Source of the DNA: Polymyxa betae A26-41
Lineage: Eukaryota > Protista > Endomyxa: Phytomyxea
Assembly (NCBI GenBank): GCA_003693705.1
Contig: RBZT01000572.1
Location: 1 to 37,335, forward strand
Length of the DNA stretch: 37,335 nucleotides
Direction of reading: 5' to 3'
The position numbers and the translations under genes were made by a program. Each line of letters begins with the position of its first letter. Within the stretch, counting starts at the first letter, position 1. The notes under the pieces are model-generated. The model saw only the letters and a program-made list of their open reading frames with translations, was not told the origin of the DNA and did not search any database. Shown here piece after piece: positions 5,113 to 27,239 of this stretch.

Positions 5113-5918
5113 CAGGGATGCCTAAGAAATAATTCATGACTAAGAGTAATTCCTAATGACCCATTAGCTGATTAGCATCATTTATTCCGGGTAGAAGGTG
5201 GGAGGAAAAAATTAGAATATTTATTCCTTTGTGGGGATAATTCTCAAAGATTTTGGGAATAATTCCTATTTATTCCAAGTTAGAATGCATAATCTCAATA
5301 TTCCAGGGCAACCCTGCGTCCATCGGTCAAGCACCATTGCAAACTGATCCAGAAGCGTCGTTTTGATTTCCCTCAACTAAAAAGGTCAGTTTGGCCATAC
5401 TTTCTTTCAAGGAATCAACTGAAACTTGTTCAAGTTTGCTTAATAACCTAGGGTTTTCTTTTTCCCAAGAGTTGAAGGGATGCAAGTTTTCCACTTGATG
5501 CTTGTGAAGATGTTCTCGCCTGCTCAATAGTAACCGGGTGATGCCTGCTGATATGGTCCAGCAGGTTTGGTCATCCTCGGTTTTGCTTGCGGGACATCCC
5601 ACAGTGACAGTCTGACAGGTCCAGACGTGGTCCTCGCCATCCACAAAAGTTTTTGCAACAAGCTCCTTACTATCAACTCGGGCCATCTCTCCTTCAGCGG
5701 TCGTCGTTTTGCCAATAAAAAGCAGCCGCGGTGCCCGCTACGACTTTCGCATTTATAATTGGAGTATATCTAGGAATATATTCCCTATTCCGGAATAAAT
5801 AACGCCATGACAGACTAGAATAGGAATAATTTATTTCTGCGGCGGTCACATTAGGAATAGTATATTTTATTTATTCACCTGAAAGAATAAATAAATAATT
5901 TTTATTCCGGAATCCCTG
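5113..5918 (-). mobile_element. hAT deletion derivative retaining the BED-finger / N-terminal transposase fragment
   Basis: TIRs CAGGGATGCC / GGAATCCCTG; 8-bp repeat CTTACAAG at 5105-5112 and 5921-5928; AT-rich GGAATA subterminal repeats. Minus strand reads WTCQ..CG.SRKQ..NLLDHISRHHP and LDQFAMVLDRWT. Confidence 0.75.
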
Positions 5919-6202
5919 GACTTACAAGAGCAAACGTTTCTGAGTCTTTCTTTATCTTCGGGCGCAGCACACTCTGATTGAACCTTTGCTAAACCAAATT
6001 TGAAATTTAATGAAATTTAACTCGTTCTGATCGAAGGTAATTTTAAGAGCTTATGCTTTCAGTTTTAATAGCGGGTTCGACGACAGAACATGATCGAAAG
6101 TCACTCTCTCGAAGTAGTGTGTTCCGCTCCCCTTTACAAAATTCTGCGAGACGGAATTTATTATGTGCATGTCACTGTATTGCGGTTCTCGTATTCCGTA
6201 CA

Positions 6203-6711
6203 TACGAGCCTGAAAATGCGTTGCGGAGTTCAAAGCTCCTTGAATGGATCGGGTTGGCGTGAATACAGCCCTATCAGTCATAAAGAAGAATATTTCTAGA
6301 CATTGTTTATTTAAAGGCATAATTACAAAATTCTTTAAATGCGTCAAGAATAAACCATATTTTGGCTTTGGATAAATATTGAACTATCGATTCGAGTAAA
6401 GGCATCGGCCAAGTGTGGGCTCACATTGAGCATTCACAGCTCCAAGATCAACTACCATTCTATAGCCTTTCTCTTTTCTCACTACTTGAATAGGACTCGC
6501 CCATTCAGAGTTATAATTCTCATAAATAAGACCAAATGTTACCAGAGAATCAGTAAAAAACCTTTCAAAAATTCACTTTGATCCTTAGTATATAATCGTG
6601 CTTTACAACGAACGGATTTAGCGTCAGGTTTCAGATGAGTCATAAACGGAGTGACAGATGCTGTAGCACCAGGCGCCCTAACTTCAATTGAAAGACATTC
6701 TTTCGATGTAT
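6203..6711 (-). pseudogene. Ty3/Gypsy RT N-terminal half (same element as 2030-2890; probably continues 7724-7919)
   Basis: EWASPIQVV..GYRMVVDL; FFMTDRAVFTPTRSIQGALNSATHFQARM. Confidence 0.85.
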
Positions 6712-7723: not shown

Positions 7724-7919
7724 TGAATCAGAAGACAAAACATGTGCAGCTTCTGCTCATACTCATGGCTCAAGCCATTTTGGAAGGCTTCTTTTACTTG
7801 ATTAACCAGACAAGAATATAATTCTGATTCAATATCATGCCCGATACCAGGATGTATTGAAGAATATTCAGTAACAAAGTTATCATTACAAGAATTTAAT
7901 CGTAGTAGACGATTGCAGT

Positions 7920-8033
7920 TGTTTTAGAAGTGGTTTAATATCAGTTCCTCACTCTGGACTGGTAACAGAGATCACATGTCATGCATGACGTCATCGTATT
8001 CGTCAGTGACGTCACGACCGCTCTCCAAAACCA
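7920..8033 (-). repeat. Probable short 3' LTR of the Copia element
   Basis: Imperfect inverted termini TGTTTTAGAAG / CTCTCCAAAACCA, directly downstream of Copia RNase H; G-rich tract precedes it on the minus strand. Confidence 0.5.
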
Positions 8034-8049: not shown

Positions 8050-9660
8050 TGATCTTCAAAACCGATCGCACGCATGCCGGACCGTTCCATCATCACATCA
8101 AGACTCAACTTCGTCGGCGCCTTTGTTAAAGCATTAGATGGATTGTCTTTGCTCGCAACAGCCTCCAGACGCAGGAACCCTTCCCGAATGCACTCTCGCA
8201 CTCAATGGTACTTCATTCGGATATGCTTGTTCGCGTCCGAAACGCCAACAGTCTCAGCCGTCCACTTCACCGCCGCGTTGTCCTCGAACACAACACTCGG
8301 CCCGGATAATAGCATGCCGATCTCTTTCAGTAGCATTATTAGCCATACGATCTGGCGTGAGCATTCGAACGCCGCAATATATTCCGCATGACATGTTGAC
8401 GTGGCCACCAGACTTTGCAGTTTCGACCGCCACGACACCGCCGTACCGAAGAGAGTCACGATCATACCACCGACGGATTTTGACGTATCAGGATCATTTG
8501 CGAAATCCGAATCCATTGACCCGCTTGGCTGACTGAGCTCCTTGCCGTTCAATGCCTCCGGATCGAACTGCACAACAGCTTTCCGCTTCTCGGAGACCAA
8601 TCCAACGTGTTGATGCCGACTGAGATACCGTAAGACATGAACCGCGGCCTCCCAGTCCTTCTGCGAAGGTCGCGCCACAAATCTCGACAAAAGGCTCACA
8701 ACGAACGTAATATCGATCCGAGTCCCGATCGACAAATGGCCCATCGATCCCAATAGTTTTCGAAACGGAAGTTGTACCACCGGGTCGTTGGCACTCGCAC
8801 GCCGCAAGTCGAACTTGGTCGGCAATGGCACCATTGGTCCTCGTCTACATCCTGTCGTCTTCCGGAGGTACTTCCGAAAGCGTGCCAATACATCACGTAG
8901 ATATCGTGTCTGGTCCAGAGTGTATGCCTTTATCAGTTTGTAGTAGCCGCATCCCCAAAACCCATCTCGCAAGCCCAAGATCTTCAGTCTTCAATCTGGG
9001 TCCCAGCATGGTCTTCACCTCATTCACCATCGAGTTCTCAGTCCCGAACAGAAGAAAGTCGTCCACGAATACGCCCAATATTACGCTATGGAGTCCATGA
9101 TGAAGTACATAGAGACAGGGATCTCCAGTGGTCTGAACAAACACAAAATCCACCAGCGTCTTGTTCAATGTCTCATACCACAACCGCGGCGCCTCGACCA
9201 GACCATATCGCGCTCTCTTCAAACGCCAGACCTTCTTGATCGGATCGCCCTTCTCGAGCCCCGATGGCTGCTCCACGAAAACTGATGTTTTCAGAACACC
9301 ATTCAGAAAACGCCGTCTTGACGTCGAGCTGGTGTATGTCCATGCCCATCATAGTTGCGAGCGCGATCAGCACCCTCAATGTCGCATACCTTAGTGTTGG
9401 AGCGAAAGTATCTTTCAGAGCCTTCCATGGGTCACAGCACCCCAGCGGCACGAACCGCGCCTTGTAACGAACGCACATGCCCTTTTCGTCGCGTTTCGTC
9501 TTGTTCACGAACTTGCTAGGAAGCACGGCAGCATCAGAAGGCCTGTCCACAAAGTCCGCGATGTCCTCTTCGATTCAGCGCCTGGAACTCCTCCTGTTCT
9601 GCTTTATGACACTCCGCGCGTTCAGGACTGGACCGCGCCTCTAACTCCGACTTCGGGTCG
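8050..9660 (-). pseudogene. Ty1/Copia pol remnant (RVT_2 RT plus RNase H)
   Basis: YKARFVPLG, QLDVKTAF, LKRARYGLVEAPRLW, VFVDD, DSDFANDPDTSKSVGG, SKLQSLVATSTCHAEY, FEDN, KHIRMKYH; frameshifted. Confidence 0.95.
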
Positions 9661-10122
9661 CATCTCGATTCAGAGGCTCCACCCGTCAGCAATGCGAACA
9701 GTCCGTCGTCCGCTCCGCCGGCCGAACACAGACATGTCCATCCGTCGTGTGATTCCTGGGCATCGTTGAAGACATTCTCGCTGACATCATTCGCGCTGTT
9801 TTCGTCATGATCAGAGCCAGGCTCCGAACCTTAGGCGATCTCGTTGTCGACGTTCTCGTCGACCGGCATGCATGCATCTCTCTCCTCGCGCTTAACTCCA
9901 CTTTACGCACCGTCACCGTCGTTAAAACGGTCGTGGTTGAAGGTTGATCCGCTTTGCTGGCGGTTCCCTCGAGCGCTGTGCCGCCCTGTTGACGACGCCC
10001 GTTAGCCCGAACACGACGGCGCGCGTCCCGAGCTAAACCATTGTAATCGTTATCCACGAAACGTTCTGGTGAATGATGAATCCTGTAGCAGATCAACGGG
10101 TTCAGATCTTTGTGATTTGCGG

Positions 10123-13100
10123 CTAAATGAATTCTGTATTCAAGCTCCCATTTCCAGTCCGGTTATTCCGTGTGTCAATATTTGTAGAATATTTCCTGGA
10201 AAAGACTCTTATTTTATTATATATATAAACGGCCCTATATTCAGTATGTAATTTTTCCCAACAGGATTTGCGCTGTCGATGATGTGCTGACGAGCATATA
10301 TTCACATCGCATGTTCTACAAAAGGCGGTCGTCCTTCCATCGCACAGCACGCAACGTCTGCTGGAACCCGACGACATATCATGTGGCCATTCTGCCGATA
10401 CGGTCAAACGAACCAGAGCGTTTCCTGGCTTGTTATAGAAATCATCCTTTCGGTATTTAGGGACACTTAGAGCAGGTCCTCCTGTGGCAGACTGCTGACC
10501 GGACGACTGTGATAATGATGATCTGCGTCCAACGATTTCGTTGGAGCTGTTGTCCGAAAACCGTGACGAAGGAATCCATTCTTGAACCATTCTCGCAAGG
10601 AACTGAAGAAACGATTGTTCGTGGTTCAAGTGACTTTTCCATTTCTGATAACTGTCAAAGCTGTCGAGTTTGTGTTCATTCTCTAGAAGTCGGTAAAGAT
10701 GATGAGCATTGATGATAGCCGGCATGATGAATCGCAGGTAAATTTATCCGCGAGTTGTCAACGAACGGAAATCTACCTTAACGTTCTTAAGTTGCCTGGA
10801 AACGACATCCTGTCCGCCTTTCGTGTGATTCCACATCGAGACAACATAAGGAACAATTTCATGGCAAGGTGGCACGCTTTGAGATGTGGAACGACGTAAA
10901 CGTATCGCATTGGTCAACAACTTCCACAAATTTACTGTCGAGCTGTCCACGGCGTGGTGCAGAGCCTGACATGGAGCGTTGGCCAAAAAAGCTGGTTCGA
11001 GCATTGGTTGAACACGCGACGTGATCGAAGAAATGATGCCAGAATAATCGCTCAAATCACCAGTACTGAATTCGACTAGGGCGGCGTAAATAATTGCTTG
11101 ATCACTGGCAACGACAAAAAGGACACGAGCACATGTTGTGGTTGATGCGTGATGCAAGACCTGCCCGCGATAGTCATGCGTCCACACTAATGTTGAAAAC
11201 AGTTCAGAAGGTGCTTTCTGTGTGACATCGTGGCAACTGAGGCAAGATTTCACAAGTCTGTCATTCGCTTCTCGGACTGTGCTGACCGTAGTTGCAGTCT
11301 TGAGTTCCAGCACGCAGGCAAACTGTTGCCCAGCCTCTGCCCCACTGTTCCATTCCATCACGCAAATGCCATCCACAGAAGTCGCCATCGTTGGAACGTT
11401 CCGGTTACACAGAAGTCCTCTGTGCACGATCTCCTCGTTGACAATCACCAACCCAGGACAATGCAACTCGATCCAGGACGCCAACGCTCGCACAATGTTG
11501 GACTCGTTCGCACTGCCAACTTTGAGCGAGGAGTTCTTGAATGGTTTCAGGAACCACTTCTTCAACATTAAGGCGAACGTCTTCAATGACGGAGTCATAC
11601 AACGAATGCGACCGATCAAAGCTGATTTTGTGCCGTTGGTCTGAAGCACCAAGGTTGAGGCAAGCTCTTTCAATTGCGGAAGCGACATTTGGCTCAGTTG
11701 CTCTGCAGATAAGTCCGGACAATGTATTGTCGCAGAAGCTTCAGCGGACACAATTCGCATACCATTAAGCAACGTCATTTGCCCTTGCTCCAAGTATGAT
11801 TTGAAAGCGCGAACAGCTGCACAAGCTATTGCTGAGGTGATAAGGCAGCAGCCTGCTCTCATTAAGTGCCAATCAAATCCGCCTTGTGCATCAGTGAGTG
11901 CTAAAACGTTGACATCAATACTTTGTTGGATCCGCTCGTGCCCAGGAAGTGACATTGTAATCAAAGAAGGTTTCTTGGGAATATATATCCATAATGCAGC
12001 TTTTGGATTGCTGGCAATTAAAGTTGCAACATGTCCCCGACCACTTCTATAGGCAATCGCGAAGAGGTTCCTATCCCCATAACGTTTCCTAGCCATGTAA
12101 AGTGACATACATCCGATCTCGGACACCATCCTAGTAAGCCATTTGAGTGAACAAACTGCAAATGAGGCAATGATTACCGTCGCGCCCCGATATTGCTTTG
12201 AATGTCCCCGAAAACGAATGGAAACGATTTCATCCTTTTGTGGGTTCCAAGAATCTCGAAGCCGCATTTCAAGGGATACTCGATTAACGTTGGGCCGTTG
12301 TATCCACGGTCTAAGCATATCAAATTTTTGCCTTTGACCTTTTCAGGCAACTGCACTGAGTGTAGTTGCATAAGAAGCATACGCACAACATCTCCGAAGC
12401 TTTCTCCTCTACCAAGCAAACGCATACCAAGAAGCAACCCGGTCGTCAAAGATACTGCATTCGTGGATACTATTCCGAAAGCTTTTTTCGCATTGTTGAC
12501 CCTTGTAAACCCCATTGCCTCAGATAAGGCAGAGGTCAGCCGGTACTGACCGTCGTCAATCGATAAAATGGTGGTGGCAGGAATGAACGCCAGTTCACAT
12601 GCTGTTCTTGAAATCGCTAACTCTGTTCTTCTGACGAAAGTATCGCCTGAAAAAGGGCGATCCCACGTCACTGAATTGGATTCTAAGTGGTTCTTCCGTT
12701 TCAATGCATGCATAATTGTGTTGAACGAAGCTTGGTTGCAGTTCTCAGCATCTGGATACAGAAACGCGTATTGAGGATCAAAGAACATCGTTGGAGTGAC
12801 ACCATATATTGACAAGTAGATAAGAACTTTGATAAAGTCAGGAAGATCTCTGCCTGAACGGATTGCCCAACAGGAATCCCCTCCCGTAATGCATCACGCA
12901 ATTCAAAAACAATGCCATCCAAAAAATAATTGACGCAGTCACTCAAGTTGATGTGTTGACTGTTCATCACTCGTAGAGCATTGCTGCAGACAGCAAGGAT
13001 TTCCGTTTTCGCAGTTAACAGCAGTTCATGATCAGAATCGGTGGCAGATAAGCTGATAACATCCGGAAGTTCGATGCAATTCCATGCAGAATCCTTCTCG

Positions 13101-13195
13101 GTCTCAGAGGAATACCCCCAATCAACCTGTGCATCCCCAGCCGGGTCATCATTGAAAAAAGCGTCCAGGTCAGCCATAACGTAAGAAGCAGCCAA
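10123..13195 (-). pseudogene. piggyBac-like DDD transposase with inserted YqaJ/lambda-exonuclease and SAP domains, plus C-terminal Cys-rich domain (copy 1; 2 frameshifts, 1 stop)
   Basis: D1 LSIDD (~12555), D2 CLDRGY (~12310), GTHKR, D3 WNHTKGGQD (~10810), Cys-rich RRCVLC..TTAFCRTCDVNIC..CWEKLH. Between D2 and D3: AQGGFDW..R..ITS, SAP, GSANE, ATSVDG, ELK, YRGQVLHH. Confidence 0.85.
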
Positions 13196-13350
13196 CCCAC
13201 TTCAGTAATTGGGGGTACCCTAACGATCTACCCACGGTAAATTGGCCATGGCTAATAAATCTCATAAATATTATTTGTGCAAAATTTCAGTGTAATCAAT
13301 CTATTAGATTAGTCGTTATGATTGTCTAAAAACTAGGCTTTTTGCCTTGT

Positions 13351-13439
13351 GGCGGTATATATTATATACCGCCGGGGGGTTCGGTGATTTTTGGAAAATT
13401 GTGTGGCGGTATATTTTATATACCGCCGCTCGATCAGGG
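13351..13439 (-). repeat. Probable 5' terminus of the piggyBac-like element, with two 23-bp palindromes
   Basis: GGCGGTATAT-NNN-ATATACCGCC at 13351-13373 and 13405-13427, followed by GCTCGATCAGGG (CCC start on the minus strand, as in piggyBac). Confidence 0.65.
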
Positions 13440-13449
13440 CAAAGTGGCC

Positions 13450-21000: not shown

Positions 21001-22498
21001 TACTGGAGATAAATCAGATGTTTTTCAACTAATACCTTGAAATAATCTTCTTTTTGCGTCATCAGTTCAAAAGTCCGTAAAACTTTCCTCACTCTCCTCA
21101 TTGCAGTCCGAGCTGAATGTAACGTTATTGTAACGTTATTGTTGCGATAATTATCTGAGGCTGCTTTTCTTCCTGAGACTGCATGCAGATTAGGAACCGT
21201 ACTGTTCGATCCTCCCTAGGTCCTTTGTATTCACGACGTTGAATTTGCTCGAGATGGCGACTCTCCATGATTACTTTGTTGAGGACTTCGACAGCGATGA
21301 CAGCCTGGAAGATGACATTGATTTATCGGAAGAGCAAGAGTGGCAGTTTCTGACAACAGCCCAGATCCCGGAATACAGTGAACGAAATTAAACAAGTTTG
21401 CCTCAATGCCAAGCGAGTCGTATTCCCATCCGAACCCTTAATCTCAGCGAATATTCCAATTATTTTCTGGATAGCATCTGCTCCTATGTTTATGACGCTG
21501 CTCTAGCGGGAGCAGAAGTTGAAAACCCAGTAACTGGCGTTGATCTGATCAATTTTATTCGCACGCTGACACCTCTTTCTGTGTACCGATGCGCCCCAAC
21601 GAAGTTGTTCGACATCAAAAACAGCCATCTCTTCCAGATTGCACAGAAGCTTGACCATATCTCATTCAAGAAGACTTTGAAAGCCTTGAACAACCAACCA
21701 GCGCAATCTTCTGATTCTGCACGATGGAACTCGCGTTTTGTTGCTGATGAGTGCATTCGACGCACTGAAAGGGCCTTTTCCCAAGCGTCATCCCGCACTG
21801 CTTACGTTGTCCGGTCAGATAATAAATAATCTCCTTTGATGACGACCAATACCGAATACGATCTACTCTTTCTGAGGCAATGGGCTTTGTTCGGATCAAC
21901 AATCCTAAGAAAGCCTTCGGGATTGCTTCTAAAAATGCAGTTTCTTTGATAAGCTCAATGGTTATCGAAATGCGTTTGATCGGAAAAGGGGAAAGCTTTG
22001 ACGAGGTGGTTCGGATTATCTTAATGTGGATTCAAGGCGTTGATCTGTTATCCCAAGTTCGCGCATCGGGCGTGTTAATTTGCCTTGATCGAGGTTACCT
22101 AGGGCCATCTTTGATTGAGTTCCTTATGGATGCTGAGTTTTCACTTATCGGTACTCACAAACGCGTCAATTGTTATCCCTTCACCTTTGGAAACAAACGC
22201 AACCGACTGTCTCAACGGGTGGTCGAGGAAATTGGATGCAAGCAGCCATTGCATATAGATCTGACAAGGGTCGTGTTGCCACACTTATCTGCACAAACAC
22301 CCGCTGAGGTTACGTATGCACCTGAAAGTTTAGATATATCTTAGAGCCTGTTCCAAGTGCAAAAATGCGATAAAAAATGCGGTAATTAAAACAATGCGGT
22401 CCAGGTATGACATCCGAAAAGTGCTGAAATTGACTGTATATTAAATGAATAAATGAGATCGTGAGTCCTGCGAACTGCGTTGTGTGCAGTCGATAACA

Positions 22499-23161
22499 AT
22501 GTCGTCTCCAGATGTCCCTGAAGTTTCCCCAACGGTCGACGCGACGTCAGCAAGCGTTCCTGCTACTACGAAGCGAGGCAGGCCTGCGAAGACTGAAGAC
22601 AGCGCTCCGGATGTACAATGGTCAACGGAAATGGTTGAAATGATGCAGGAATTTCATCGAACTTTCTTCGTCGATTCGAAAAACAAAAATACGAATGCGA
22701 AAGGATGGAATCGAATCACAAGTGAGGTCAATAATACCTTCAATATGGACATATCTGTAGACAAAGTTAAGCGGAAGTACCAGGATGTGCAGCGGGCCAA
22801 TCGACAGCTGACGAATATCGACGAAAAATCAACTGGAAACGTACAACTTCCCAGGAAACCGGAATACTGGGACTCACTGGTATCTCATTTCGGCGGTAAT
22901 GAGGGTTCGGCCCACGATTGTCTCAACAGGGTAACTCCTCAAGTTGGCAAGGCTGAAGACTCTGGATCACCTACTAAGAATGGGTTCTTGGAAGTCGCAG
23001 GCGTTGCCCAAAAGGCGCCATCTGTACAAACAGTGGGGACCCCTCGGAGACCCAAGCGTGCTGTGAGCGAACCTGACGTCTCGATCGGCAAGAGATCAAG
23101 GAGGGCTTGCTTGGCATGGGCCAAATGCTTGCCTCAGCTTTGGCGGCTCCAAAAGAGGTAG
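22499..23161 (+). CDS. Myb/SANT-like (trihelix) Harbinger DNA-binding protein; 3' end probably frameshifted
   Basis: QWSTEMVE...KGWNRITSEVN...VDKVKRKYQDV...TGN...KPEYWD. Confidence 0.75.
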   Translation: MSSPDVPEVSPTVDATSASVPATTKRGRPAKTEDSAPDVQWSTEMVEMMQEFHRTFFVDSKNKNTNAKGWNRITSEVNNTFNMDISVDKVKRKYQDVQRANRQLTNIDEKSTGNVQLPRKPEYWDSLVSHFGGNEGSAHDCLNRVTPQVGKAEDSGSPTKNGFLEVAGVAQKAPSVQTVGTPRRPKRAVSEPDVSIGKRSRRACLAWAKCLPQLWRLQKR

Positions 23162-23299
23162 AACCGAGTAAGCTGGACAGCATCGGAGCCTTGCTGGAGC
23201 GGCAGGCTGTACAGACGGAAGAAACGAATAGTCGACCTTAGTGCAGAATTTAGCAAGCAAACAGTAGAATCAGTGATTGGAATAAAGATACGTTTTGAT

Positions 23300-24431
23300 C
23301 CGATCTCGTTTTCGTTTCCCTGCGTGCTCCTGCATTATGCTGGGAATCCCTGTATCCAGCTCTGGAATACAGCTGCAGACATTGTCATCATTGTTCTGTT
23401 GGTCCCGAAGATCAATCAGAATGTTATGCAAGATGAAGCACGCCTCAATATTTTTGCCATCTGCAATGTGGCAGATTCGCCGGTATCGAAGTGCACTTTC
23501 TGGCTGAGTTTGGTTTGGAAGATGCGGAAGCGATTCTTGATCATGCCAAATGCTCGTTCCACAGTAATTCTGGTCTTGGAATGCAGGTAGTTATAATGTG
23601 ATTCGTCAGCTGGAATATCATCTCGAACAAACATTCTGACAATTTGAACCCGGCGTCTCCAAGACCATGAAGTCTCTTTGGTAAAACTGAGCCGATTTCG
23701 GATCCGAATTTGGAATAATTCCAAATTGCCTTATCGTTCGCCGATCCTGGTCGGAGATCATAGCTGAGAATTCGAGCGCGGTGGTCAACTACTACGAGGG
23801 CGTTAATCGCAGGAAAGCCCTTGCGACAATACCATCCTTCGTATTCATATGGCCTTTCTATAGCAATTAGGCACCCATCAACTGCGAAGCAGCACCCTGG
23901 GAATCCAGCTATCTGCTCGAAACCTTCCGCAAGTTGTAGCCATTTTTGTTCGGTTTCAGGCATTTTTATGACTCGGGGACCCAGGCAGTGAAGGATGACA
24001 TTGACTACCTGCCAAAAAAATCTGTTAGCGGCTGACTTCCCATTCTACACAGTTTAGCTGCGTCGCTAAGCGATCCAGAATGCATCAGGTAGCATCGCGG
24101 GACAGATACTCTATCGTACCCAGAAAACTGTGTTGTCATTTAGAGGCTCGTTTATTCGCAGCCAATGTTGCTCAATAAGCTCAGCAATACTGTCGAAAGA
24201 TGGTTTGGTACAACGAAAACTATCGCGGAACCAGCCGTCATCGTAAATTGAGTAGGCATCTGCAATTCGGAACTGACTATGACGTTTGCTGAATTTTCTA
24301 CGAGGTGTAGGATTGTTACGACCATCTGAAGGACGCCTCATCGACCCTAGAGCCATTACAGCCCCACAGACAGCGATCGCGCTAGCCTGAACGGCGCCGA
24401 CCACTGAGATGTTTCCAGGGATTGTCATCAC
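23300..24431 (-). pseudogene. Harbinger transposase (DDE_Tnp_4), frameshifted
   Basis: FRDSFRCTKPSF; AVDGCLI; CRKGFPAIN; PGSAND; LGDAGF; HSKTRITVERAFGMIKNRFRI. Confidence 0.93.
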
Positions 24432-27239
24432 ATTTATTGAAAATCAGGTTGCAGAGCTCATTTCCAATAAATGCGATGCTAAAAATAGAGCGCAAATTTG
24501 ATTGGAGGGTTGCTCATTTATTTTCCGCATTTTTTCACTTGGAACAAGCTCTTATACTCTGTAGAGGTTTGGGTGTATCGAGCGAAGCCTTCTGACAGCT
24601 TACCTGATAGCGACATTCCTTTGGAGCTGGTTTACATCTCGTTGGATCAGAACACTGCCGCGCTGACATCGTCCCAGGGAGGCTTCGAATGGCATGTTGT
24701 CAGTGCAGGAGCATCTTTAATCACTTCAACCGTAGCTCAGGAAGCTCTGATTTACTTTTATGTCGAATGCTTCAGCGGAAGAAGCCGCACTATTTCCCGC
24801 TCTCGGCATGGACATATCCTCGTCATCTGCGGAATCAACAGAAGACTCAGCTTCTCTGCGGAACAGATCCTTGTCCCAGTTGAAAGCTCAGTTAAGGCAA
24901 TTGGGTTTGCCGCTCACCGGCAACAAAGATTTGCTGATTGATCGCTTGAATGCTCCTGCTCGGTCTAATTACAGCGTTGTCAACAATCTGATGAAGAAGT
25001 GGTTCATGAAGCCCCTAAACAACTCTTTTGTCAATTTAGGTAGTGCCAACGAGATTAAAAATTTTGCATGCGCTAACAACTTTCTTCGTACAGCGCGGGG
25101 AGGAATGTAATATGCTCATTGGCACACCGGAACAACGAGGTTTACTTCTACAGAAGACGCGTTCAACCAGTTCTCATCTTGCGACATCCATCGATGGTTG
25201 TGCTGTCTTCAAGGACACGAACACCAGTCCCGCAATCGATTTCGCAGTGATTCTGGATTTTAAACTGCGACAGCTTCTTCAACGCAATCTGAAGCGGCTG
25301 TTAGGGTGGCGTTTGCCCCAGCAAGGGCCCGACAGCTAAACAAAGTGGTATTTCGAACGGAATTTAGAAGCTACATGCTTAAAGCCCTTGTTTGGACACC
25401 TCCATATCGGTCACAAATCCTACATCACGTATCTGTCACAGGAATGCGATGCTGTTTGTTTGTTGTTGCCAGTTTGACCTCAATCGTTTATGCATTGTTT
25501 GTTGATTTCTCCCAGAACTGCCTCTGTTATATTCCAACTTCCTTCAACGAATGTCGTACACAGCCTTGGAGGCATTTCTCAATGAGCCAGGGAACTTTCT
25601 AACTGGGGCCGACGATTTTCGGACGCGCTGTTGACATCGAAACTCTACAAACATGGCAAAAGTTGGCTAGGGCAATCAGGAATGAACTTATCCGCCGCCC
25701 AGCATCTGATATTGGTCCATATTGCGTGTCGAAATGGAACCATTGCAAAGGAGGGCAAGATGTCTGCTCCAGAATTCTGAAGAGCGTCAAGGTTGATTTC
25801 AGAAAGTTACGACCGCGTGCATTCATCTTCATCCGCTTTCTCATGCCTGCTTTGATGAACGCCCATATGCTGTTACGCCTGATCGAGATCGAACCCCATT
25901 TGGAGCGATTTCTGTCATATCAAGAACTGAAGGCAGCCTTGAGTGACCGAAGAACGATTTGGGAATTCCTGCGCGATTTCATTGACAATTGGGTTCCTTC
26001 ACTGTCTTTTATTCGCAGAGAGTCGGACGTTGGTTCCGTCCGTCAAACTGCCGAAGATCCTGTAGCGAGAATGAATTCCAGCCTTGCTAGGACGCCTAAG
26101 CGAAACATTCTCAGATGGCTCCAATCTAATGAAGGCAAACGTCTCCGATTATCTGCGGAACAGCATCAACGTGGTTCCAGAAAGAGGCGCAACTGCCCGG
26201 TGTGTCATACGCAAACCACTGTTTACTGTAAGACATGTGACATCAATGTTTGCGCCCAACTGGCATATGGAGCGAGACAAACTTGTTGGGAGAAGGTCCA
26301 CACAAGTCCAAATCTTATTGCCATCCATAAACAGGTCCGATCCGGCGAGAACAGACGGAGAGGACGCTCGAATTCACTTGATCCATAGATGGTATATTAT
26401 ACCATATAAGGTTTTTGATACGGGGTTTTCCCTATAAAAAGTCCCTGGAAATGTGTTGCGTTCGTATCGAAAAAAGACGTCACAAGTAGTCAAAATACGG
26501 ATATTTTTTGTTTTTGGAAAGTCAGTGACAAGAGCGAGAGCGTTTTCTAAGAAGTTTTTTACTAAAAACCGCTCGGTCCCGATTGGTGGGGCTCCAAATC
26601 CTTGCATGGACGGAGTCCGTTCGGGGTTAACACGGAACGAATTGCGTGAGCGGCCCAAACTACGATGGCGACGACGCTTTCGGCTGCGATCACGAGAACA
26701 ACTGTTAACATGGCTGGAACTGCTTTCAAACGACATAGTGAGCGGCGATCTAGATCCGCAAGCGAAAAACCTAAGTGTTAGATTTATAAATGGCACGCAT
26801 GATGGCATGCATTGGTAACCCCCAAAGGAGACCGTGTCTGCACTCTGCTCTCAACCCGTACCCGCGCTTGGGCAGCAAGTAACTAGAGTGCACACTGTAC
26901 AAAGAAACATTTCTGCGCGACTGTATAAGAAAATGTGCGAGACGGGCTCGCGCACGCCTAGAAATATTAACCGGATAAATTGATGATTTACCACAAGTTT
27001 ATAATTTCACGCTGACGTATATTTTCGCTTATACGAACGTAATCGTGATACATTGCATCAGCAATCTGGTCGCGCAAACGTTTGCCATCGGATTGATCCG
27101 GAAGATCCACCGCTACCCGTTCTTCCAACTTACCTTCCCGTTGGTTTCTTTAAGCTCTCTTTCGGATTCGGCCTGAATTTTTTCGCTGGCGCGAGTATTC
27201 AGGCGGATAAAATTGCTGGCTGTGCACAGAACAGTAACT

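What the first reader, a model, noticed from the sequence alone, without database searches (positions are those of the whole stretch)
10123..13439. piggyBac-like transposase with a YqaJ/lambda-exonuclease and SAP module inserted inside its catalytic core
SEEN: the joined minus-strand ORFs give ~1000 aa with piggyBac motifs in order: SIDD (D1), CLDRGY (D2), GTHKR, WNHTKGGQD (D3) and a C-terminal Cys-rich zinc domain. D2 and D3 are ~1.5 kb (~500 aa) apart. The spacer holds an ordered lambda-exonuclease/YqaJ motif set: AQGGFDW..R..ITS, G..NE, GL..ATSVDG, ELK, YRGQ..H, LFVV. ORF 10744-12318 runs from the nuclease into D3 without interruption. KNOWN: in T. ni piggyBac D346 and D447 are ~100 aa apart, and piggyBac excises seamlessly. 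YqaJ-type enzymes are 5'->3' dsDNA exonucleases and occur with some other eukaryotic DNA transposons (e.g. Kolobok), but I know of no description of one embedded in a piggyBac RNase-H fold. INFERENCE: a dual-nuclease transposase could resect the donor-site break and push repair towards sister/homologue-templated restoration, making cut-and-paste effectively replicative. Alternatively it could process transposon or target ends.
Basis: partly seen in the sequence, partly recalled or inferred. Interest (0 to 1): 0.92.

Follow-up and report, generated by a model that had tools for sequence, protein, structure and literature searches.

The report
piggyBac transposase with built-in exonuclease
The window holds a dead, truncated copy of a piggyBac-type jumping gene whose cutting enzyme carries a second, lambda-exonuclease-like nuclease plus a SAP DNA-binding motif inside its catalytic core. 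The same layout is conserved in hundreds of unannotated proteins from other organisms and was not found in the papers searched.

Summary
Window 10244-13439 (minus strand) is a decayed, 3'-truncated copy with two frameshifts and one in-frame stop.

The flanks are piggyBac-like:
- Termini are 5'-CCCTGATCG...CGATCAGGG-3' with 4-bp TTAA-like duplications (TTAG or CTAA).
- A 26-member family profile hits piggyBat (E 8e-5) and piggyBac (E 4.7e-3) colinearly.
- Pfam DDE_Tnp_1_7 passes its cut-off in one relative.
- The Cys-rich tail superposes on piggyBat's (Z 6.2).

The roughly 350-aa insert folds like lambda exonuclease (Z 10.8, rmsd 3.7 Å over 192 residues) with a SAP domain nested in it. It sits after the insertion-domain region and runs straight into the third catalytic Asp.

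A profile search found 531 cluster representatives. Every listed protein long enough to show it has the same order, with 479-774 aa between D2 and D3. The nuclease residues are as invariant as the DDD triad.

The host is a plasmodiophorid-like eukaryote of about 27 Mb. All copies examined there are broken, but short non-autonomous derivatives exist.

How the nuclease works is inference. I favour 5'-to-3' resection of donor ends. KolobokE and ISL2EU pair such nucleases with transposases, but not embedded. Other first-stage notes report this architecture elsewhere in this genome.

The parts
10244..13439 (-). Decayed, 3'-truncated autonomous copy of the piggyBac-like element. Its 5' end is at 13439.
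   Evidence: 95-96% nucleotide identity to G000:C993:5013-14396 over exactly this span. The end of the coding region and the 3' inverted repeat are missing; in C993 and in short derivatives they lie about 550 nt further on.
13431..13439 (-). 5' terminal inverted repeat core, CCCTGATCG.
   Evidence: Shared by six termini in the genome. Its reverse complement, CGATCAGGG, ends the 3' termini.
13440..13443 (-). 4-bp flank at the 5' end. It reads TTTG here. The partner is lost with the 3' end.
   Evidence: Complete copies elsewhere show TTAG/TTAG twice, CTAA/CTAA twice and CTAG/TTAG once.
13405..13427 (-). Subterminal palindrome GGCGGTATATAAAATATACCGCC, at bp 13-35 of the element.
   Evidence: A similar palindrome lies near the 3' ends. 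It is analogous in position to the palindromic internal repeat (bp 17-33) bound by the piggyBac Cys-rich domain (PMC7351741). That comparison is inference.
12878..13177 (-). N-terminal region, starting at MADLD. A frameshift follows between 12857 and 12878.
12177..12857 (-). piggyBac-like N-terminal helical region and first half of the catalytic core. D1 is at 12546-12563, D2 at 12300-12317 and GTHKR at 12234-12248. A second frameshift lies near 12132-12177.
   Evidence: D1 and D2 are invariant in 26/26 relatives. The D2 region aligns to piggyBat IYMDNYYNS...GTIRKNRGIP.
11890..12132 (-). Region that occupies the place of the piggyBac insertion domain (FAIAYRSGRGHVATLIAS at 12010-12063), plus the linker to the nuclease.
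   Evidence: The model predicts three strands here at low confidence. Placement is by colinearity with piggyBac residues 372-433 and is inferred.
10834..11889 (-). Lambda-exonuclease/YqaJ-type PD-(D/E)XK nuclease module, nested in the transposase.
   Evidence: The model of the C607 copy matches lambda exonuclease 3sm4_B at Z 10.8, rmsd 3.7 Å over 192 residues, across model residues 79-431. That range runs from GGVEWH to the residue just before the D3 motif. Pfam YqaJ gives E 0.054 for this copy and 5.4e-4 for P0001. The catalytic E, D, E and K are kept in 24 of 24-25 relatives.
11605..11697 (-). SAP DNA-binding motif nested inside the nuclease, between its N-terminal helix and the GSANE motif.
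   Evidence: Pfam SAP gives E 5.7e-4 here, below the cut-off, and E 7e-8 in P0001, above it. 13/26 relatives match. Structure match to the SAP domain 2kvu: Z 5.4, rmsd 2.1 Å.
10807..10833 (-). D3 motif, WNHTKGGQD.
   Evidence: The family region aligns to piggyBac PQMVMYYNQTKGGVD at residue 433 onward. W, N, K and D are kept in every relative that has the region.
10744..10746 (-). In-frame premature stop codon.
   Evidence: Contigs from paralogous copies read another base at 10744.
10246..10743 (-). C-terminal helical region and truncated Cys-rich domain (CVLC 10342-10353, CRTC 10309-10320, CWEKLH 10246-10263).
   Evidence: The equivalent domain of the C607 model matches piggyBat 9c0f_C residues 497-572 at Z 6.2, rmsd 2.7 Å. 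zf-Tnp_2 hits appear in 2/26 relatives.

Best explanation
Shown: window 10244-13439 (minus strand) is a dead, 3'-truncated copy of a cut-and-paste DNA transposon of the piggyBac superfamily. Its transposase of about 1,000 aa has the piggyBac order of parts: an N-terminal helical region, D1, D2, GTxKR, the region where piggyBac has its insertion domain, D3, a C-terminal helical region and a Cys-rich domain. A module of about 350 aa lies between the insertion-domain region and the D3 motif. That module is a lambda-exonuclease/YqaJ-type PD-(D/E)XK nuclease with a SAP domain nested in it. The layout defines a large, conserved and so far unannotated lineage, with one named member in Plasmodiophora brassicae.

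Inferred: the DDD core cuts and joins the CCC...GGG ends at TTAA-like 4-bp targets, as piggyBac does. The Cys-rich domain probably binds the subterminal palindromes.

Inferred, at about 40% of my own odds: the embedded nuclease, helped by the SAP domain, binds the 5'-phosphorylated double-strand ends left in the donor DNA after excision and resects them 5' to 3'. That would prevent the seamless re-ligation typical of piggyBac. Repair would then go by homologous recombination from the sister chromatid or homologue, which restores the element at the donor site and makes transposition effectively replicative.
For: Copies and ends:
- At least 12 diverged colinear copies exist in the genome.
- A sister copy on C993 and four derivatives of 547-626 bp define the termini as CCCTGATCG...CGATCAGGG. 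Four of five complete pairs have identical 4-bp duplications, TTAG or CTAA.
- The element on the metagenomic contig L031 ends ...CATCAGGG followed by CTAA.

piggyBac homology:
- The profile of 26 full-length relatives hits piggyBat 9c0f_C (E 8e-5, three colinear stretches) and piggyBac 6x67_C (E 4.7e-3, including the D3 motif) among 177,635 PDB sequences.
- DDE_Tnp_1_7 scores 28.3 bits against a cut-off of 22.4 in P0034. It matches 7/26 members at E up to 0.1, best 4.1e-7.
- The Cys-rich domain superposes on piggyBat's at Z 6.2.
- 28 of 30 named Atlas clusters nearest to the N-terminal part are DDE_Tnp_1_7.

Nuclease:
- Lambda exonuclease Z 10.8, LHK-Exo Z 10.0, phage exonuclease 3k93 Z 8.9.
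- YqaJ clusters come up by shape and by sequence features.
- The GxxNE, SxDG and ExKT residues are kept in 24 of 24-25 members. The Arg of the W-x-x-x-R-x-G-x-x-T-S helix is kept in 25/26. From memory, that Arg aligns with lambda exonuclease R28, which binds the 5' phosphate. The DDD triad is kept in 26/26, 26/26 and 19/19.

Lineage:
- 531 cluster representatives at E <= 1e-3.
- Every listed protein long enough to show it has the order N-part, nuclease, D3, Cys-rich domain. D2-D3 spacing is 479-774 aa, against 101 aa in piggyBac (PMC7351741).
Against: - No tool tested any activity. The direction of resection and the substrate are unknown.
- The window copy alone does not reach significance for DDE_Tnp_1_7. 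Single-sequence searches against the PDB found nothing.
- The model of the N-terminal half was poor (pLDDT 43), so the RNase H fold and the exact insertion point are not shown structurally.
- The duplications are mostly TTAG or CTAA rather than TTAA.
- Lambda exonuclease works as a ring-shaped trimer. An embedded domain may not form one.
- All copies examined in this genome are broken, so nothing shows current activity.
- Repbase and Dfam could not be searched.
Confidence: 0.72

Rival explanations
1. The identity is the same, but the embedded PD-(D/E)XK nuclease acts as an endonuclease. It would cut the strand that the DDD site does not cut, as TnsA does beside TnsB in Tn7. Hairpin formation would then be unnecessary.
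For: The module sits beside the piggyBac insertion-domain position, which in piggyBac lines the DNA channel next to the active site (PMC7351741). Its catalytic residues are as conserved as the DDD triad. Tn7's two-nuclease transposase is an established precedent; this is from my own knowledge.
Against: The best fold matches are processive 5'-to-3' exonucleases: lambda exonuclease, LHK-Exo and 3k93 at Z 8.9-10.8. No TnsA or restriction-enzyme-like chain ranks near them. The Arg that corresponds to lambda exonuclease's 5'-phosphate-binding residue is kept in 25/26.
Confidence: 0.12
2. The identity is the same, but the nuclease processes the excised transposon's own ends or the target. It might trim the 4-nt 5' overhangs or opened hairpins, or resect at the integration site. 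It would not act on the donor flanks.
For: Excised piggyBac ends also carry 5' overhangs. The location next to the target-binding channel is compatible with it.
Against: There is no obvious benefit. piggyBac integration needs only the 3'-OH ends, and the 5' overhangs let it bypass DNA synthesis (Mitra et al. 2008, as cited in PMC4122938). Nothing here tells the candidate substrates apart.
Confidence: 0.1
3. The nuclease-like module is catalytically silent. It would serve only as a DNA-binding or oligomerisation scaffold together with the SAP domain.
For: Pfam YqaJ scores stay just under the cut-off for single sequences (20.7 against 22 bits). No activity data exist.
Against: The metal-binding and catalytic residues E, D, E and K are kept in 24 of 24-25 members that share only 21-35% identity. 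That pattern is typical of active enzymes.
Confidence: 0.04
4. It is not piggyBac but a member of Kolobok. Kolobok also makes TTAA duplications, and its KolobokE lineage carries a lambda-exonuclease-like nuclease.
For: PMC9587614 reports that Kolobok generates TTAA duplications, that KolobokE encodes a PD-(D/E)xK lambda-exonuclease-like nuclease, and that Kolobok occurs in protists.
Against: Kolobok termini are 5'-RR...YY-3'. These are CCC...GGG. In KolobokE the nuclease lies downstream of the transposase domain rather than inside it. The Pfam, PDB and Atlas matches are all to piggyBac-type transposases and to the piggyBac Cys-rich domain. The third catalytic residue is a D in a KGGxD motif, as in piggyBac. 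No Kolobok sequence was on hand for a direct comparison.
Confidence: 0.02
5. It is an artefact. A separate nuclease gene or another element inserted by chance into one piggyBac copy, or the motifs are chance resemblances.
For: The window copy is broken in three places and nested insertions are common in this region.
Against: The same in-frame layout occurs in uninterrupted ORFs of 940-1391 aa from independent sources and in at least 12 diverged genomic copies. The nuclease fold runs directly into the D3 motif.
Confidence: 0.01

Closest known systems
piggyBac superfamily transposases (T. ni piggyBac 6x67/6x68; Myotis piggyBat 9c0f)
   Same: - DDD motifs in the same order and sequence context: DDDQ against piggyBac DEQ (my recollection of the piggyBac sequence), DRGY against piggyBat DNYY, GTxKR against piggyBat GTIRKNR, WNxxKGGxD against piggyBac YNQTKGGVD (for the last three).
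- N- and C-terminal helical regions and a C-terminal Cys-rich domain.
- CCC...GGG termini, 4-bp TTAA-like duplications and a subterminal palindrome near each end.
   Different: - 479-774 aa separate D2 and D3, against 101 aa in piggyBac.
- A complete lambda-exonuclease-type nuclease with a nested SAP domain follows the insertion-domain region.
- The duplications seen are mostly TTAG or CTAA, not TTAA.
- Sequence similarity is so low that Pfam misses most members.
KolobokE lineage of Kolobok DNA transposons (PMC9587614)
   Same: A DDD/E transposase that targets TTAA is combined with a PD-(D/E)xK lambda-exonuclease-like nuclease.
   Different: - In KolobokE the nuclease lies downstream of the transposase domain, not inside the catalytic core.
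- Kolobok termini are RR...YY.
- It is a different transposase superfamily.
ISL2EU transposons (PHIS superfamily; PMC4482050, PMC4122938)
   Same: A eukaryotic cut-and-paste element that carries a YqaJ-type exonuclease of unknown role.
   Different: - The YqaJ protein is a separate second ORF.
- The transposase is Harbinger-like with a THAP domain.
- The target site differs.
Lambda exonuclease, LHK-Exo and phage YqaJ recombination nucleases
   Same: - Same fold (Z 9-11).
- Same motif order: W..R.G..T.S helix, G..NE, S.DG, E.K, Y..Q.
- Conserved catalytic residues.
   Different: - Here it is not a free-standing ring-forming enzyme paired with an annealing protein. It is a domain inside a transposase.
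- It is itself interrupted by a SAP domain.
Tn7 TnsA/TnsB
   Same: A DDE transposase works with a PD-(D/E)XK-type nuclease at transposon ends. This is an analogy for a two-nuclease transposase, drawn from my own knowledge.
   Different: - They are two separate proteins.
- TnsA is restriction-endonuclease-like, not exonuclease-like.
- No sequence or fold match was seen here.

Membership tests
piggyBac superfamily | DDD catalytic triad in piggyBac-type motifs, in order | tested here: met
   D1, D2 and D3 motifs lie at 12546-12563, 12300-12317 and 10807-10833. They are invariant in 26/26, 26/26 and 19/19 relatives. The D2 and D3 regions align to piggyBat and piggyBac.
piggyBac superfamily | Significant sequence similarity to DDE_Tnp_1_7 or to solved piggyBac transposases | tested here: met
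   Met at family level. The A6 profile hits 9c0f_C at E 8e-5 and 6x67_C at E 4.7e-3. P0034 scores 28.3 bits against a cut-off of 22.4, and 7/26 members match at E up to 0.1. Not met by the window ORFs alone.
piggyBac superfamily | Terminal inverted repeats starting 5'-CCC and ending GGG-3' | tested here: met
   CCCTGATCG...CGATCAGGG in the window, C993, C455, C711 and the short derivatives. The L031 3' end reads CATCAGGG.
piggyBac superfamily | 4-bp target-site duplication of TTAA | tested here: inconclusive
   The 4-bp length is met: TTAG/TTAG twice, CTAA/CTAA twice, CTAG/TTAG once. Single ends read TTAA, CTAA, TTAC and TTTG. The sequence is TTAA-like (YTAR), not strictly TTAA, and the sample is small.
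piggyBac superfamily | C-terminal Cys-rich (cross-brace zinc) domain | tested here: met
   Model residues 548-622 match piggyBat 497-572 at Z 6.2, rmsd 2.7 Å, 23% identity. zf-Tnp_2 gives E 0.0014 and 0.017 in two relatives. The domain is truncated in the window copy.
piggyBac superfamily | RNase H-like fold with a three-stranded insertion domain after the fifth strand | tested here: inconclusive
   The model of the N-terminal half had pLDDT 43. Three low-confidence strands precede the nuclease in the second model.
YqaJ / lambda exonuclease (PD-(D/E)XK) | Fold | tested here: met
   3sm4_B Z 10.8, rmsd 3.7 Å over 192 of 228 residues. 1avq Z 10.6, LHK-Exo Z 10.0, 3k93 Z 8.9. Foldseek gives probability 0.95-1.00 for the lambda exonuclease chains, though with E > 0.001. 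YqaJ clusters in the Atlas.
YqaJ / lambda exonuclease (PD-(D/E)XK) | Catalytic E...D...ExK residues and the N-terminal W..R.G..T.S helix | tested here: met
   Present in the window copy. Kept in 24 of 24-25 members for the catalytic residues and 25/26 for the Arg.
YqaJ / lambda exonuclease (PD-(D/E)XK) | Pfam PF09588 above its curated cut-off | tested here: not met
   Best result is 20.7 bits against a cut-off of 22 (P0001, E 5.4e-4). The window ORF gives 14.2 bits. 3/26 relatives match at E <= 0.1. It is therefore a distant relative of the Pfam family, assigned by fold and motifs.
YqaJ / lambda exonuclease (PD-(D/E)XK) | Processive 5'-to-3' exonuclease activity and ring-shaped trimer | not testable with these tools
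   Needs biochemistry or a multimer model.
SAP domain | Pfam PF02037 above cut-off and helix-extension-helix fold | tested here: met
   P0001 scores 32.4 bits against a cut-off of 23.9, and 13/26 relatives match. Structure match to 2kvu: Z 5.4, rmsd 2.1 Å. The window copy is below the cut-off at 19.9 bits.
Kolobok (KolobokE) | Termini 5'-RR...YY-3' | tested here: not met
   The termini are CCC...GGG. The definition comes from PMC9587614.
Kolobok (KolobokE) | Nuclease encoded downstream of the transposase domain | tested here: not met
   The nuclease lies between D2 and D3 in every member.
Kolobok (KolobokE) | [quoted passage not shown] | not tested
   No Kolobok sequences or profile were on hand.
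ISL2EU | YqaJ protein as a separate ORF beside a THAP-DDE transposase | tested here: not met
   Here there is a single ORF with the nuclease embedded. The definition comes from PMC4482050.

The most novel reading that the evidence does not exclude
A whole lineage of piggyBac-type transposases works as a two-nuclease machine. The DDD site excises and integrates. The built-in lambda-exonuclease/SAP module resects the broken donor ends, so that homologous recombination copies the element back. This would turn a seamless cut-and-paste transposon into an effectively replicative one. Alternatively, the module cuts the second strand and replaces the hairpin step. Either case would be a transposition pathway not described for piggyBac.
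Probability: 0.3. Interest if true: 0.85.

Novelty: new variant of a known kind. Interest (0 to 1): 0.75.

Why it matters
piggyBac is one of the best-understood eukaryotic transposases and one of the most used in genome engineering. Its defining property is footprint-free excision.

A large natural lineage that has kept a second, exonuclease-type active site inside the catalytic core suggests a different way of handling the donor break or the second strand. The search found 531 cluster representatives at 50% identity. Public names are only 'hypothetical' or 'SAP domain-containing'.

That makes an open question testable: how cut-and-paste elements gain copies.

It also shows that the insertion-domain position of a DDD transposase can hold a whole enzyme. 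It adds a third, independent association of lambda-exonuclease-like nucleases with eukaryotic DNA transposons, after KolobokE and ISL2EU.

In practice, these proteins are missed by Pfam-based annotation of transposable elements.

Tried and rejected
- Pfam on the four window ORFs gave only weak SAP and YqaJ hits and no DDE_Tnp_1_7.
- Whole-genome six-frame searches with PF13843 and PF09588 found nothing. The first-look filter is too insensitive for this family, and PF13843 rang in no control genome.
- Single-sequence phmmer searches and the two small family profiles (A4, A5) against the PDB gave only SAP hits.
- The AlphaFold model of the N-terminal half (L031 exon 1, 15-row alignment) was unusable at pLDDT 43.
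- The first word-based protein search found only two relatives. The metagenome contig scan found one more locus.
- The 5' end of the L031 element was not found.
- The termini of the second window copy were not found by a simple pattern.
- Reads: only short assembled pieces that mix paralogous copies, and no RNA run. This gives nothing on expression or on whether the frameshifts are real beyond agreement with the assembly.
- Considered and rejected: Kolobok membership, a chance nested insertion, and an intron that removes the insert. The only intron seen is 52 nt and lies inside the nuclease's N-terminal motif.


Full report
**1. What is in the window.**

On the minus strand four open frames follow each other: 12704-13201, 12177-12893, 10747-12342 and 10126-10743. 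Together they read as one protein of about 980 aa, broken by two frameshifts and one stop. The frameshifts lie near 12857-12878 and 12132-12177. The in-frame stop is at 10744-10746.

The second and third catalytic Asp are 1,502 nt apart.

Comparison with a 95-96% identical sister copy on contig C993 shows that homology runs over window 10244-13440 only. Position 13440 is the last flank base, which happens to match in both copies, so the element itself starts at 13439. The 3' part is missing here: the end of the Cys-rich domain, the 3' untranslated region and the inverted repeat. ORF letters 10123-10243 are unrelated flank.

**2. It is a transposon family with piggyBac-type ends.**

The genome (G000, 27.1 Mb, 1,001 contigs) holds at least 12 diverged copies with 30-60% protein identity and the same colinear order. 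A second copy lies in this window at about 21254-26405. All copies examined are broken.

Four short non-autonomous derivatives of 547-626 bp exist on C634, C931, C648 and C455. Together with the C993 and C711 copies they define the termini as 5'-CCCTGATCG...CGATCAGGG-3'. Each end has a subterminal palindrome of the type GGCGGTATATAAAATATACCGCC.

The 4-bp duplications are as follows:

| Copy | 5' flank | 3' flank |
|---|---|---|
| C634 | TTAG | TTAG |
| C931 | TTAG | TTAG |
| C455 | CTAA | CTAA |
| C711 | CTAA | CTAA |
| C993 | CTAG | TTAG |
| C648 | no clear duplication | TTAA |
| C723 | not examined | CTAA |
| C778 | not examined | TTAC |
| Window | TTTG | lost |

A related element on a metagenomic contig ends ...CATCAGGG followed by CTAA. 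CCC...GGG ends and a 4-bp TTAA-like duplication are the hallmarks of piggyBac. Kolobok also makes TTAA duplications but has RR...YY ends (PMC9587614).

**3. The flanks of the protein are piggyBac-like.**

Single sequences are too diverged to show this. Pfam gives no DDE_Tnp_1_7 hit for the window ORFs and only E 0.16 for another copy, at the D2 region.

An exhaustive profile search with the N-terminal half found 531 cluster representatives at E <= 1e-3. Many are uninterrupted proteins of 850-1,391 aa. A profile of 26 full-length members (A6) then gave two hits among 177,635 PDB sequences:
- piggyBat transposase, E 8e-5, with three colinear stretches: the N-terminal region, the D2/GTxKR region, and the C-terminal helices plus Cys-rich domain.
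- T. ni piggyBac, E 4.7e-3, including PtvvalWNrlKGgvD against PQMVMYYNQTKGGVD from residue 433.

Further support:
- DDE_Tnp_1_7 passes its curated cut-off in P0034 (28.3 against 22.4 bits). It matches 7 of 26 members at E up to 0.1. zf-Tnp_2 matches 2.
- The modelled Cys-rich domain superposes on piggyBat's at Z 6.2, rmsd 2.7 Å.
- 28 of the 30 named Atlas clusters nearest to the N-terminal part are DDE_Tnp_1_7.

**4. The insert is a lambda-exonuclease-type nuclease with a nested SAP domain.**

I modelled a continuous 659-aa frame of the C607 copy. The nuclease core reached pLDDT 70-94.

| Match | Z | rmsd / aligned |
|---|---|---|
| Lambda exonuclease 3sm4_B | 10.8 | 3.7 Å / 192 of 228 residues |
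| LHK-Exo | 10.0 | 3.8 Å / 167 |
| Phage exonuclease 3k93 | 8.9 | 3.9 Å / 177 |
| SAP domain 2kvu | 5.4 | 2.1 Å / 47 |

Foldseek probabilities for the lambda exonuclease chains are 0.95-1.00, though its E-values stay above 0.001. Atlas searches by shape and by sequence features also return YqaJ clusters.

The aligned range, model residues 79-431, begins at GGVEWH and ends at the residue before the D3 motif. The nuclease therefore runs straight into the helix that carries D3. In window terms the module is 10834-11889.

By colinearity with piggyBac, the module follows the insertion-domain region and precedes residue 433. The piggyBac reference points are catalytic domain 263-457, insertion domain 372-433, and D268, D346 and D447 (PMC7351741). 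This placement is inferred, not shown structurally.

**5. The layout is conserved and constrained.**

Among the listed relatives, every protein long enough shows the order N-part, nuclease, D3, Cys-rich domain. None has the two halves without the nuclease. D2-D3 spacing is 479-774 aa.

In the 26-member alignment, at 21-35% identity:
- The nuclease core is about as conserved as the RNase H halves (0.29 against 0.33 and 0.25 mean pairwise identity).
- Its E, D, E and K are kept in 24 of 24-25 members.
- The helix Arg is kept in 25/26.
- The DDD triad is kept in 26/26, 26/26 and 19/19.

From memory, these motifs align with lambda exonuclease as follows: W24...R28 (5'-phosphate binding), the E of GKQYE, D109, and E129/K131.

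One metagenomic copy (L031) has a 52-nt GT...AG intron at 7914-7965 inside the nuclease's first motif. By codon arithmetic, splicing gives ...TASQ-G-GAEWH. I did not build or search the joined sequence. The two exons were used separately.

**6. Host and range.**

An HSP90 gene of the genome is 88% identical to that of Plasmodiophora brassicae and 92-95% identical to unnamed metagenome proteins. The host is therefore a plasmodiophorid-like rhizarian; this is inference.

The only named family members found are P. brassicae CEP03823.1, annotated 'hypothetical protein', and XXQ33955.1, annotated 'SAP domain-containing protein'. The others come from metagenomes and run assemblies.

**7. Mechanism.**

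What is shown is two sets of conserved catalytic residues in one polypeptide, piggyBac-type ends, and 4-bp duplications.

What is inferred:
- The DDD core works as in piggyBac.
- The Cys-rich domain may bind the subterminal palindromes, as the piggyBac domain binds its palindromic internal repeat at bp 17-33.
- The nuclease most likely resects 5'-phosphorylated donor ends 5' to 3'. That would channel repair into homologous recombination and restore the element. My odds are about 40%.

The exonuclease-type fold and the retained Arg favour this over a TnsA-like second-strand cut (about 12%), processing of transposon or target ends (about 10%), and a silent scaffold (about 4%).

**8. Known or new.**

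Lambda-exonuclease-like or YqaJ nucleases are known in KolobokE, downstream of the transposase, and in ISL2EU, as a separate ORF.

Full-text searches found no paper that describes a piggyBac transposase joined to a YqaJ or lambda-exonuclease domain. The seven papers that hold both 'piggyBac' and 'YqaJ' were judged from titles and abstracts, and one was read. A 2009 diatom study mentions elements 'weakly related to piggyBac' without detail.

Repbase and Dfam could not be searched. I therefore rate this a new variant of a known kind, pending that check.

Four other first-stage notes report the same architecture elsewhere in this genome. They are unchecked and were not used as support.

Noticed in passing
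window 21254-26405 (+): A second, strongly diverged copy of the same family, about 34-56% protein identity to relatives. About 2.4 kb of foreign DNA lies between its D2 region (to about 22358) and its nuclease part (from about 24778), and it has several stops.
   Followed up: partly
G000:C634:12963-13583, C931:35731-36348, C648:93888-94433, C455:54535-55086: Short (547-626 bp) non-autonomous derivatives. They keep about 290 bp of the 5' end and about 260 bp of the 3' end of the window's subfamily, with intact termini and 4-bp duplications.
   Followed up: yes
window 10121-10241: The stretch next to the truncation point is a very high-copy repeat. Summed contig depth is about 20-50 times that of the neighbouring bins in two runs. 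A Copia-like reverse-transcriptase fragment lies further on at 8893-9550 (minus strand).
   Followed up: no
G000:C993:6867-12475: The sister copy is split by a 5.6-kb insertion exactly in its SAP region. A third copy on C778 is split by about 1 kb of foreign DNA.
   Followed up: partly
L031:7914-7965: A 52-nt GT...AG intron lies inside the nuclease's N-terminal motif of an otherwise intact metagenomic copy. The genomic copies examined lack it.
   Followed up: partly
L056 (G000:C877:3327-5195): The HSP90 gene is 88% identical to that of Plasmodiophora brassicae. The genome therefore seems to belong to another plasmodiophorid-like organism.
   Followed up: partly
L031:3886-5241 and 5340-6251: A Harbinger-type transposase (DDE_Tnp_4/Plant_tran) and a NAM-associated ORF lie just upstream of the metagenomic element. 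They may have displaced its 5' end.
   Followed up: no
Atlas cluster, row 5: Some bacterial YqaJ proteins carry a Rho_N (SAP-like) domain. The pairing of a YqaJ nuclease with a SAP-like motif may therefore be older than its capture by the transposase.
   Followed up: no
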